Assembly: GCF_902459465.1 (NCBI RefSeq)
Contig: NC_047062.1
Location: forward strand, 18,724,001 to 18,788,000
Length of the DNA: 64,000 nt
Reading direction: 5' to 3'
Source of the DNA: Asterias rubens
Lineage: Eukaryota
Both the position numbers and the translations under genes were made by a program. The notes beneath the pieces were generated by a model. That model did no database searches, was not told where the DNA came from, and saw nothing but the letters and a program-made list of their open reading frames with translations. This document shows, in pieces, positions 10,871-10,918 of the stretch. Numbering within the stretch: position 1 is the first letter of the stretch; each line of letters begins with the position of its first letter.

Positions 10871-10918
10871 GCATAGGCATGGAGGAATAAATTAGAATTT
10901 ATTCCTCCATGGCATAGG
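10871..10918. mobile_element. 34-bp (17+17) hairpin with CATGGAGG termini flanked by a 7-bp direct repeat GCATAGG; P-element-type excision footprint
   Basis: GCATAGG|CATGGAGGAATAAATTA-GAATTTATTCCTCCATG|GCATAGG. Confidence 0.7.

What the first reader, a model, noticed from the sequence alone, without database searches (positions are those of the whole stretch)
10871..10918. Exact 17+17-bp P-element-style excision footprint: fossil of a P/THAP9-type transposon system
Seen: a 34-bp insert made only of two inverted termini (CATGGAGGAATAAATTA and CATGGAGGAATAAATTC) joined tail to tail, between 7-bp direct repeats (GCATAGG). The first 16 nt match the Drosophila P-element TIR (CATGATGAAATAACAT) at 11/16 positions. 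Established: P transposase cuts 17 nt into each end and leaves 17-nt 3' overhangs at the donor site, so repair leaves up to 17+17 bp of termini between the TSDs; the P-superfamily element Galileo makes 7-bp TSDs. Inference: a P-like transposase with the same 17-nt staggered chemistry excised elements in this animal's germ line. Two more footprints of the same family occur in this window, which suggests a genome-wide footprint population.
Basis: partly seen in the sequence, partly recalled or inferred. Interest (0 to 1): 0.8.

Follow-up and report, generated by a model that had tools for sequence, protein, structure and literature searches.

The report
Transposon excision scars in starfish DNA
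The 34-base palindrome is a real scar left when a cut-and-paste jumping gene hopped out of the common starfish genome; a sister species shows several such scars are recent, and their sizes fit the unusual 17-base staggered cut known only from fruit-fly P elements.

Summary
Observation confirmed. Window 10871-10918 reads GCATAGG, then a 34-bp insert (16+2+16 palindrome), then GCATAGG. No Markov shuffle gave such a structure (0 of 300).

The window is Asterias rubens LR699092.1:18724001-18788000. I fetched about 63 kb of orthologous DNA from A. amurensis (about 94% identical).
- The 12-bp relative at 48179-48190 faces a clean empty site there.
- The 34-bp palindrome is absent there.
- The 30-bp relative at 63574-63603 is shared.
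- A. amurensis has two scars of its own, with clean empty sites in this window. One matches 12/13 the 36-bp end of a 295-bp non-coding transposon at 56657-56951, itself A. rubens-specific with an 8-bp duplication.

Seven scars measure 34, 30, 23, 17, 13, 13 and 12 bp. None exceeds 34, and several keep only one terminus. That excludes tiny mobile elements and mirrors published Drosophila P-element repair junctions.

Best reading: excision footprints of a transposon with a ~17-nt staggered cut, hence P-like chemistry. Some are recent, not only fossil.

Not shown: a transposase, or a long element with the CATGGAGGAAT termini.

First-stage notes on other pieces of this genome report the same kind of palindrome (s1-150148, s1-150284, s1-172703, s1-150525, s1-180042); no follow-up was shown.

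New member of a known kind; interest 0.55.

The parts
10871..10877 (+). Left copy of the 7-bp target-site duplication GCATAGG (site 1)
   Evidence: Exact repeat of 10912-10918.
10878..10911 (.). 34-bp insert made of two inverted termini joined tail to tail (16+2+16 palindrome), read as 17+17 nt of retained transposon ends
   Evidence: Absent from the A. amurensis ortholog at L138:7497-7526.
10912..10918 (+). Right copy of the 7-bp duplication GCATAGG (site 1)
10849..10871 (+). Adjacent A. rubens-specific scar: GTG, then the 13-nt GATAAGCTCTATG (one terminus, reverse complement CATAGAGCTTATC), then GTGTAGG. The left duplication copy is truncated to 3 nt.
   Evidence: A. amurensis has a single ATGTAGG here.
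48172..48197 (+). Site 3: CATCAAC, the 12-bp insert CATGGAGGAATG, then CATCAAC. The first 11 nt equal the site-1 terminus. Read as a join at AT microhomology that keeps only 1-3 nt of the other end.
   Evidence: Clean empty site in A. amurensis at L141:10679-10703.
63567..63610 (+). Site 2: GATTAAT, a 30-bp insert (TATGGAGGTAAATCT plus the reverse complement of CATGGAGGTAGAAAC), then GTTTAAT. An older scar.
   Evidence: Present with 1 substitution in A. amurensis at L141:25943-25986.
18631..18667 (-). Older shared scar of the CATAGAGCT family: 7-bp duplication (TGTAAAC/TGCAAAC on the minus strand) around a 23-bp insert
   Evidence: The duplication is exact in A. amurensis at L140:8670-8706.
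56649..56959 (.). 295-bp non-autonomous element (56657-56951) with perfect 36-bp terminal inverted repeats starting CATAGAGTTATATATAAG, flanked by the 8-bp duplication AACACCAC/AACACAAC. The longer partner of the CATAGAG scars.
   Evidence: Absent from A. amurensis at L141:19111-19131.
9171..9178 (+). Clean empty site (single GTTTACCC) opposite A. amurensis scar (a): GTTTACCC, ATATTACTCTATG, GTTTACCC
   Evidence: The scar lies at L138:9676-9704. Its reverse complement CATAGAGTAATAT matches the MITE end at 12/13 positions.
9340..9346 (+). Empty site (single GGAGAAC) opposite A. amurensis scar (b): GGATAAC, CATAGAGCTAGTCTATG, GGAGAAC
   Evidence: The scar lies at L138:9505-9535.
15529..15564 (-). 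Possible old scar: CATAGAGGTAAATTGA plus 20 nt of filler between ATGTTGC and ATGTTGG. Uncertain.
   Evidence: Shared with A. amurensis.

Best explanation
These are donor-site scars (excision footprints) of cut-and-paste DNA transposons in the germ line of Asterias.

Proposed sequence of events:
1. An element inserts and duplicates 7 bp of target (8 bp in a sister family).
2. Its transposase later cuts the 3' end at the element/flank junction and the other strand about 17 nt inside the element. Each flank is then left with a 3' overhang made of up to 17 nt of the element's terminus.
3. End joining seals the gap.

Expected products, with the sites that fit them:
- A join without loss gives duplication + 17 + 17 + duplication (site 1, 34 bp).
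- Joins after trimming or at microhomology give shorter inserts (30, 23 and 17 bp).
- Loss of one whole overhang gives one-sided remnants (12 and 13 bp).
- Deeper resection truncates one duplication copy (10849-10871).

Shown here:
- The inserts are lineage-specific insertions that carry a target duplication.
- They consist of transposon-end sequence.
- They never exceed 34 bp in this sample.
- A related 295-bp element was still inserting after the A. rubens/A. amurensis split.

Inferred: the 17-nt stagger itself, and that the enzyme is a P-superfamily (P/THAP9-like) transposase. That is the only family for which this chemistry is established.
For: Structure is real and non-random.

Same-family relatives share the terminus and have 7-bp duplications. 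Exact-duplication hits number 6 observed against 0.28 expected.

Species and ortholog. Window exons are 100% identical to A. rubens XP_033624109. A. amurensis loci L138, L140 and L141 align at about 94% identity.

Comparative evidence:
- Site 3 has a clean empty site in A. amurensis.
- The site-1 palindrome is absent there.
- Site 2 is shared.
- Two A. amurensis-specific scars have clean empty sites in the window.
- Scar (a) matches the MITE end at 12/13 positions.
- The MITE is an A. rubens-specific insertion with an 8-bp duplication.

Length ceiling: 34, 30, 23, 17, 13, 13, 12 bp. No duplication-flanked palindromic insert of 35-112 bp occurs in the window.

Literature:
- P transposase makes a 17-nt staggered cut (PMC7776569).
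- Donor ends carry 17-nt 3' overhangs. Sequenced junctions include the blunt 17+17 join, the one-sided CATGATGAAATAA(CAT)G type, truncated duplications and templated fillers (PMC2895639 Table 1).
- P makes 8-bp duplications; 1360 and Galileo make 7-bp ones (PMC3698922, PMC4168063).
- P and zebrafish Pdre2 ends start with CAT.
- Echinoderms, sea stars included, carry THAP9-like genes with the P-transposase domain (PMC13228809).
Against: - No transposase gene was found. No Pfam hit came from the ten window ORFs scanned, of the eleven of at least 120 aa, and the fetched loci contain only host genes.
- No long element carries the CATGGAGGAATAAATT termini in 64 kb of A. rubens plus 63 kb of A. amurensis.
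- The sample is small: 7 scars, and only one reaches 34 bp. The ceiling is therefore suggestive, not proven.
- An earlier first-stage note mentions inserts up to 36 bp elsewhere in this genome.
- Site 1 shows 16+2+16, so the 17th bases could be filler.
- The A. amurensis state at site 1 (GCGTAGG + C + TAGG) is not a clean empty site.
- Similarity to the Drosophila P end is good only for the site-1 family. It is 4-8 matches in 9-17 compared positions for the other termini, and the known P relative Pdre2 scores 4/13.
- The cleavage chemistry of several other superfamilies is unknown.
Confidence: 0.72

Rival explanations
1. Ultra-small MITEs: the 21-36-bp palindromes are themselves mobile elements made of two terminal repeats and are moved in trans by a transposase.
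For: Sites 1 and 2 consist of two inverted termini with a target duplication, which is the minimal layout of a MITE. Earlier first-stage notes raise this alternative (s1-150284).
Against: - Four of seven inserts are one-sided or nearly so (12, 13, 13 and 23 bp), and one has a truncated duplication. Such pieces cannot be mobile units.
- Lengths and centres differ at every site.
- Site 3 shares 11 nt with site 1 but lacks a second terminus.
- Drosophila P needs internal transposase-binding sites beyond the inverted ends (PMC7776569).
Confidence: 0.07
2. Extreme internal deletions of inserted elements, arising by abortive gap repair from a sister copy or by slippage between the inverted ends. These would be transposon remnants, but would say nothing about a 17-nt cut.
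For: In Drosophila, incomplete synthesis-dependent repair followed by end joining produces internally deleted P elements (PMC2895639; PMC4168063). Palindromic ends favour slippage.
Against: Such products keep arbitrary and usually much longer stretches of each end. Here every end keeps at most 17 nt. Nothing lies between 35 bp and the intact 295-bp MITE among the lineage-specific indels of about 47 kb of aligned sequence.
Confidence: 0.12
3. Footprints of a different, non-P superfamily whose cleavage chemistry is unknown. Candidates include the 7-bp-duplication hAT-like elements noted in this genome, or an undescribed family that also cuts deep inside its ends.
For: - hAT-like MITEs with a 7-bp duplication are active in the same window (21195-21371, duplication AATGTTC).
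- A first-stage note (s1-151341) reports an hATw-like element with a 7-bp duplication.
- No P transposase was tied to these termini.
Against: - Characterised hAT, Mutator and Transib enzymes form hairpins on the flanking DNA and leave no transposon sequence (PMC5499845 abstract; otherwise my own knowledge).
- The hAT-like MITE ends start with CAGGG, not CAT.
- Tc1/mariner leaves 2-3 nt at TA sites.
- Only P is known to leave about 17 nt.
Confidence: 0.08
4. Chance, or a template-switch (snap-back) repair insertion unrelated to any transposon.
For: Small palindromic insertions without a duplication do occur here. One example is the 28-bp A. rubens-specific insert at about 16368-16398, which resembles its own flank.
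Against: - 0 of 300 shuffles reproduce site 1.
- Independent sites share the same termini.
- Exact 7-8-bp duplications sit opposite clean empty sites in the sister species.
- One scar matches the end of a real MITE at 12/13 positions.
Confidence: 0.01

Closest known systems
Drosophila melanogaster P-element excision footprints (donor-site end-joining junctions; Beall and Rio 1997; Chan, Yu and McVey 2010, PMC2895639)
   Same: - Target duplication, then up to 17 nt of each inverted terminus, then the duplication again.
- The blunt 17+17 join, microhomology joins, one-sided retention and truncated duplications are all seen in both.
- The termini start with CATG, and site 1 matches the P end at 11/16 positions.
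   Different: - 7-bp rather than 8-bp duplication for the CATGGAGG and CATAGAGCT families.
- Natural scars in a deuterostome, apparently fixed in the two reference assemblies, rather than induced events.
- The parent element and transposase are not identified.
Galileo and 1360 (Hoppel), P-superfamily transposons of Drosophila
   Same: 7-bp target duplications, occasionally 8 bp, within the P superfamily (PMC3698922, PMC4168063).
   Different: Galileo has very long, internally repetitive inverted ends and a GTANTAC target preference. No such preference is evident here, and their footprints have not been catalogued.
Zebrafish Pdre2 / THAP9 P-like elements (PMC10983969)
   Same: A deuterostome P-type system with short inverted ends starting with CAT, internally deleted copies and an active transposase.
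   Different: 8-bp duplication, 13-bp ends of unrelated sequence, and no footprint population described.
Tc1/mariner and hAT excision footprints
   Same: Also donor-site scars flanked by the target duplication.
   Different: Tc1/mariner leaves only 2-3 nt per end at a TA target. hAT leaves no transposon sequence, because the hairpin forms on the flank. Neither can give 11-17 nt of terminus.

Membership tests
P-superfamily transposon excision footprint | Flanked by a 7- or 8-bp target-site duplication created by the insertion | tested here: met
   Exact 7-bp repeats at sites 1 and 3, and 6/7 at site 2. An 8-bp repeat flanks A. amurensis scar (a) and the MITE. The sister species has a single copy at sites 3, (a) and (b).
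P-superfamily transposon excision footprint | The insert consists of transposon terminal sequence, with at most 17 nt from each end (17-nt staggered cleavage) | tested here: met
   Insert lengths are 34, 30, 23, 17, 13, 13 and 12 bp. Nothing lies between 35 and 112 bp. The sample is small (n=7) and the stagger itself is inferred.
P-superfamily transposon excision footprint | Junction spectrum like the experimental P donor-site repair products | tested here: met
   Compared with Table 1 of PMC2895639. Site 1 is a blunt join. Site 3 is the CATGATGAAATAA(CAT)G type. Scar (a) and 10852-10864 are one-sided. 10849-10871 has a truncated duplication. The comparison is qualitative.
P-superfamily transposon excision footprint | Longer elements with the same termini exist | tested here: inconclusive
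   CATAGAGT family: yes, the 295-bp MITE at 56657-56951, which matches scar (a) at 12/13 positions. CATGGAGGAAT family (sites 1 and 3): none in 64 kb plus 63 kb.
P-superfamily transposon excision footprint | Autonomous copies encode a P-type transposase (THAP or another DNA-binding domain, an RNase H catalytic domain and a GTP-binding insertion) | not tested
Context only: THAP9-like genes exist in echinoderms (PMC13228809), and an AI note (s1-150154) reports a broken P-type transposase gene in this genome.
P-superfamily transposon excision footprint | Termini begin with CAT(G), as in P and Pdre2 | tested here: met
   All families here start with CATGGAGG or CATAGAG. Site 1 matches P at 11/16 positions. 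This is a weak criterion.
Miniature inverted-repeat element (ultra-small MITE) | Both terminal repeats present, and copies of uniform length and sequence | tested here: not met
   One-sided inserts of 12-13 nt and heterogeneous lengths and centres.
hAT excision footprint | 8-bp duplication with a few changed flank bases and no transposon sequence retained | tested here: not met
   The inserts carry 11-17 nt of terminus. The hAT chemistry is taken from the literature and my own knowledge.
Tc1/mariner excision footprint | TA target duplication with 2-3 nt of each end | tested here: not met
   The duplications are 7-8 bp and are not TA.

The most novel reading that the evidence does not exclude
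Asterias carries a P-like transposon system that was active within the last few million years and may still be. Its 17-nt staggered cleavage is conserved between insects and echinoderms, and it has left on the order of ten thousand small palindromic scars per genome.

This would make excision footprints a measurable class of lineage-specific indel: about 5 of roughly 110 indels of at least 9 bp in about 47 kb of aligned sequence. The enzyme could be the THAP-less P-type transposase noted elsewhere in this genome.
Probability: 0.35. Interest if true: 0.7.

Novelty: new member of a known kind. Interest (0 to 1): 0.55.

Why it matters
The 17-nt staggered cut is the oddest feature of P transposase. 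It has been mapped directly only for the Drosophila enzyme. Natural scars that stop at 17+17 nt in a starfish would be in-vivo evidence that this geometry is ancient and shared by deuterostome P-like enzymes.

The comparison with A. amurensis shows that insertion and excision continued after the two species split. A functional transposase may therefore still exist in Asterias, which would interest people who build transgenesis tools for echinoderms.

The scars also give a simple, datable marker of cut-and-paste activity that repeat annotation misses. They explain part of the small palindromic indels between closely related genomes.

Tried and rejected
1. I scanned the metagenome and viral collections for the 16-mer CATGGAGGAATAAATT. 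All hits were single chance matches in unrelated contigs, with no palindromes.

2. The candidate fourth site at 27397-27426 has an exact GTGCCTT repeat around 30 bp ending in CCTCCATG. I rejected it. It and the solo motif at 35751 are internal parts of a 173-bp hAT-like MITE family with copies at 21195-21371, 27327-27464, 35621-35791 and 39576-39697. It is also shared with A. amurensis.

3. The other solo CATGGAGG motifs:
- 448 is not conserved, so probably chance.
- 8989 is shared and unexplained.
- 31643 lies in the part of the window (28.2-36.6 kb) with no A. amurensis sequence, so it could not be compared and is unexplained.

4. Pairing distant CATGGAGG ends within the window gave no pair with a matching duplication.

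5. Flanks of sites 1-3 have no paralogous copy in the window that could serve as an internal empty site.

6. Pfam on ten of the eleven ORFs of at least 120 aa gave no hits.

7. ENA contigs that might have given a third Asterias haplotype had no retrievable DNA. The Acanthaster TADA2B gene was not on record.

8. The window's 3-kb foldback element (about 1150-4103) has (C/T)ATGAGGG termini, but I could not find a clean duplication for it. I did not count it as a partner.

9. The A. amurensis state at site 1 could not be resolved without an outgroup. It is either an empty site with slippage or a second, different scar.

Full report
**1. The observation**

One search shows GCATAGG (10871-10877), a 34-bp insert (10878-10911) and GCATAGG again (10912-10918). 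The insert is a palindrome of two perfect 16-nt arms around the dinucleotide AG (I11). Read as 17+17, the two termini are CATGGAGGAATAAATTA and CATGGAGGAATAAATTC.

- An exhaustive scan of the window for a 7-bp direct repeat around an insert with a perfect terminal inverted repeat of at least 7 nt finds only this site.
- With arms of at least 12 nt and an exact repeat, 300 Markov-2 shuffles give none.
- With relaxed criteria chance is not negligible: 0.42 hits per shuffle. So the strength lies in the quality of the site and in the shared termini.
- The 8-mer CATGGAGG occurs 9 times against 1.4 expected.
- An 8-bp duplication (GGCATAGG with a 33-bp insert) is an equally literal reading.

**2. 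Relatives in the window**

- 63574-63603 is a 30-bp insert between GATTAAT and GTTTAAT. Its ends are TATGGAGGTAAATCT and the reverse complement of CATGGAGGTAGAAAC.
- 48179-48190 is the 12-bp CATGGAGGAATG between exact CATCAAC repeats. Its first 11 nt equal the site-1 terminus, and it has no second arm.
- A scan anchored on CAT[GA]GA termini with a 7- or 8-bp repeat gives 6 exact-repeat hits against 0.28 expected. It adds 18631-18667 (23-bp insert, CATAGAGCT family).
- At 56657-56951 lies a 295-bp non-coding element with perfect 36-bp inverted ends starting CATAGAGTTATATATAAG and an 8-bp duplication, AACACCAC/AACACAAC. Its end matches the site-1 terminus at 15 of 21 positions.

**3. Which genome**

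- The ORFs at 8197-8874 and 5676-6212, and their paralogues at 16668-17312 and 14816-15352, are exons of two tandem sphingosine-1-phosphate phosphatase 2-like genes.
- The second pair is 100% identical to Asterias rubens XP_033624109. The first is 95-97% identical to the A. amurensis orthologue.
- The look-up of encoding contigs places the window at A. rubens LR699092.1:18724001-18788000.
- The same tool gave three A. amurensis loci from CP134952.1: L138, L140 and L141. L141 was reached through the TADA2B gene, which spans window 47.5-58.9 kb.
- These loci align to window 1-28.2 kb and 36.6-63.9 kb at about 94% identity, intergenic DNA and introns included.

**4. What the sister species shows**

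- *Site 3.* A. amurensis reads ...AAATCAAC|AAAGCC... with a single copy of the 7-mer and no insert (L141:10679-10703). The A. rubens difference is exactly 12 bp plus a 7-bp duplication.
- *Site 2.* Present in both species with one substitution, so it predates the split.
- *Site 1.* The palindrome is absent from A. amurensis (L138:7497-7526). That site reads GCGTAGG + C + TAGG, which is 5 nt more than a clean empty site. It can be read as slippage in a TAGGC-rich stretch. It can also be read as a second, different scar: duplication, 1 nt of terminus, truncated duplication. In that case the insertion predates the split. Alignment scores do not decide.
- *The MITE.* It is missing from A. amurensis, so it inserted in the A. 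rubens lineage. The A. amurensis site also lacks 11 nt next to it.
- *Scars specific to A. amurensis.* The list of lineage-specific indels of at least 9 bp reveals two, each opposite an empty site in the window.
  - (a) GTTTACCC | ATATTACTCTATG | GTTTACCC, against a clean single GTTTACCC at window 9171-9178. The insert's reverse complement, CATAGAGTAATAT, matches the first 13 nt of the MITE end at 12 positions.
  - (b) GGATAAC | CATAGAGCTAGTCTATG | GGAGAAC, against a single GGAGAAC at 9340-9346; A. amurensis carries 3 extra nt (ACT) beside its left duplication copy.
- *A second scar next to site 1.* A. rubens has GTG | GATAAGCTCTATG | GTGTAGG (10849-10871) where A. amurensis has one ATGTAGG. 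That is one terminus of 13 nt with a truncated left duplication copy.

**5. Interpretation**

- The inserts are insertions that carry a target duplication, made of transposon-end sequence.
- They are too short, too heterogeneous and too often one-sided to be mobile elements.
- They measure 34, 30, 23, 17, 13, 13 and 12 bp. Nothing lies between 35 bp and the 295-bp MITE among duplication-flanked inserts or lineage-specific indels.
- This is what repair of a donor site with long transposon-derived overhangs should leave.
- The published junctions after P-element excision in Drosophila start from duplication + CATGATGAAATAACATA / TATGTTATTTCATCATG + duplication. They include the blunt 17+17 join, joins at 2-3 nt of microhomology, products that keep about 13 nt of one end and 1 nt of the other, truncated duplications and templated fillers (PMC2895639).
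- Site 1 corresponds to the blunt join. Site 3 corresponds to a join at AT microhomology. Scar (a) and 10852-10864 correspond to one-sided loss.
- The 17-nt stagger is established for P transposase and described as unusually long (PMC7776569; PMC10983969).
- Duplications of 8 bp (P) and 7 bp (1360, Galileo) are the P-superfamily sizes.

**6. What is not shown**

- I found no transposase and no long element with the CATGGAGGAAT termini.
- The similarity of the site-1 terminus to the Drosophila P end is real: 11/16, or 12/17 for the left arm, nominal p about 2e-4. It does not extend to the other families here, nor to zebrafish Pdre2. It is therefore weak evidence of kinship.
- Membership in the P superfamily rests on chemistry by analogy, duplication length and the CAT start.
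- As context, echinoderms including sea stars have THAP9-like genes with the P-transposase domain (PMC13228809). An earlier agent note (s1-150154, unchecked by me) reports a broken P-type transposase gene in this genome.

**7. Rivals**

- Micro-MITEs are contradicted by the one-sided inserts.
- Abortive gap repair or slippage would not stop at 17 nt per side. With seven scars this argument is still thin.
- hAT-type elements with 7-bp duplications are active in the same window: a 173-bp MITE at 21195-21371 is A. rubens-specific. Their ends start with CAGGG, and hAT chemistry leaves no transposon sequence.
- An uncharacterised superfamily with a similarly deep cut cannot be excluded.

**8. Extent**

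- The window holds five solid scars in 64 kb.
- About 47 kb of aligned sequence holds three A. rubens-specific and two A. amurensis-specific scars.
- Extrapolated to a genome of roughly 0.4 Gb (size from my own knowledge), that is on the order of 10^4 scars. This is a rough extrapolation from small numbers.
- A 24-bp insert, CATGGGGCTATTTACAGCTCCATG, between CTTCAAA and CTTCGAA in Patiria miniata (L142:31694) hints that the family reaches another starfish order. That locus was judged on structure alone.
- First-stage notes on other pieces of this genome describe the same palindromes. I treat them as leads only.

**9. Verdict**

The kind of thing is known: transposon excision footprints with P-type geometry. 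Its presence, abundance and recency in a starfish appear to be undescribed in the papers I could search.

Noticed in passing
window 1150-4103: A foldback-like element of about 3 kb with long inverted arms built from 20-bp tandem repeats (GAGCAAAACCATATATATAR) and termini (T/C)ATGAGGGRCCGTTTATGAC. It is absent from A. amurensis, so it is a recent insertion. I could not find a clean target duplication. It carries an AGAGGGCGC motif that also occurs in the 36-bp ends of the MITE at 56657-56951.
   Followed up: partly
window 21195-21371; also 27327-27464, 35621-35791, 39576-39697: A 173-bp hAT-like MITE family whose right end is the reverse complement of CAGGGCTGTATGCTTCG. The copy at 21195-21371 is A. 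rubens-specific with the 7-bp duplication AATGTTC. Its internal CATGGAGGCA motif mimics the footprint terminus.
   Followed up: partly
window 18829-19867: A 1039-bp A. rubens-specific element with 13-bp inverted ends (CAGACATGCCAAC) and the 6-bp duplication TCTTTA.
   Followed up: no
window 12242-12628, 12951-13348, 38754-39142, 49568-49955, 54574-54961, 62291-62669; L138/L140/L141 several: A MITE family of about 385 bp at TTAA sites, with ends AGGCAGTGGACAC... and an internal hairpin TTGATTTCGAGACCTCA. Its presence or absence differs between the two Asterias species at several sites, so it was recently active.
   Followed up: no
This suggests A. rubens has one more repeat copy than A. amurensis.
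   Followed up: no
window 16368-16398: A 28-bp A. rubens-specific insertion with an imperfect palindrome (TTCCTTCAATTGAAGGTGAA) and no target duplication. It resembles the neighbouring CAATTTGA repeats, so it may be a template-switch repair product.
   Followed up: no
window 5676-8874 and 14816-17312: Two tandem sphingosine-1-phosphate phosphatase 2-like genes on the minus strand (about 46% identical over exon 1). Both are conserved as a pair in A. amurensis, Patiria and Acanthaster. Site 1 lies about 2 kb upstream of the first gene.
   Followed up: partly
L142:13079-13127 (Patiria miniata): A 49-bp palindrome with perfect 18-nt arms (GGGTGCTGATAATTACCC...) between AGAGTCT and AGACTCT. It is a duplication-flanked mini-palindrome of another family and is longer than 34 bp.
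   Followed up: no
L140 (A. amurensis), Aa-specific 14-bp insertion opposite window ~15680: GTTTCCAGGT-type 9-bp direct repeat around the 5-bp CTACA (GTTCCAGGT CTACA GTTCCAGGT). It is either a tandem duplication or the scar of an element that makes 9-bp duplications.
   Followed up: no
window 63563-63614: The reconstructed pre-insertion target of site 2, TTGGATTAATCCAA, is a perfect 14-bp palindrome. The other targets are not palindromic.
   Followed up: no
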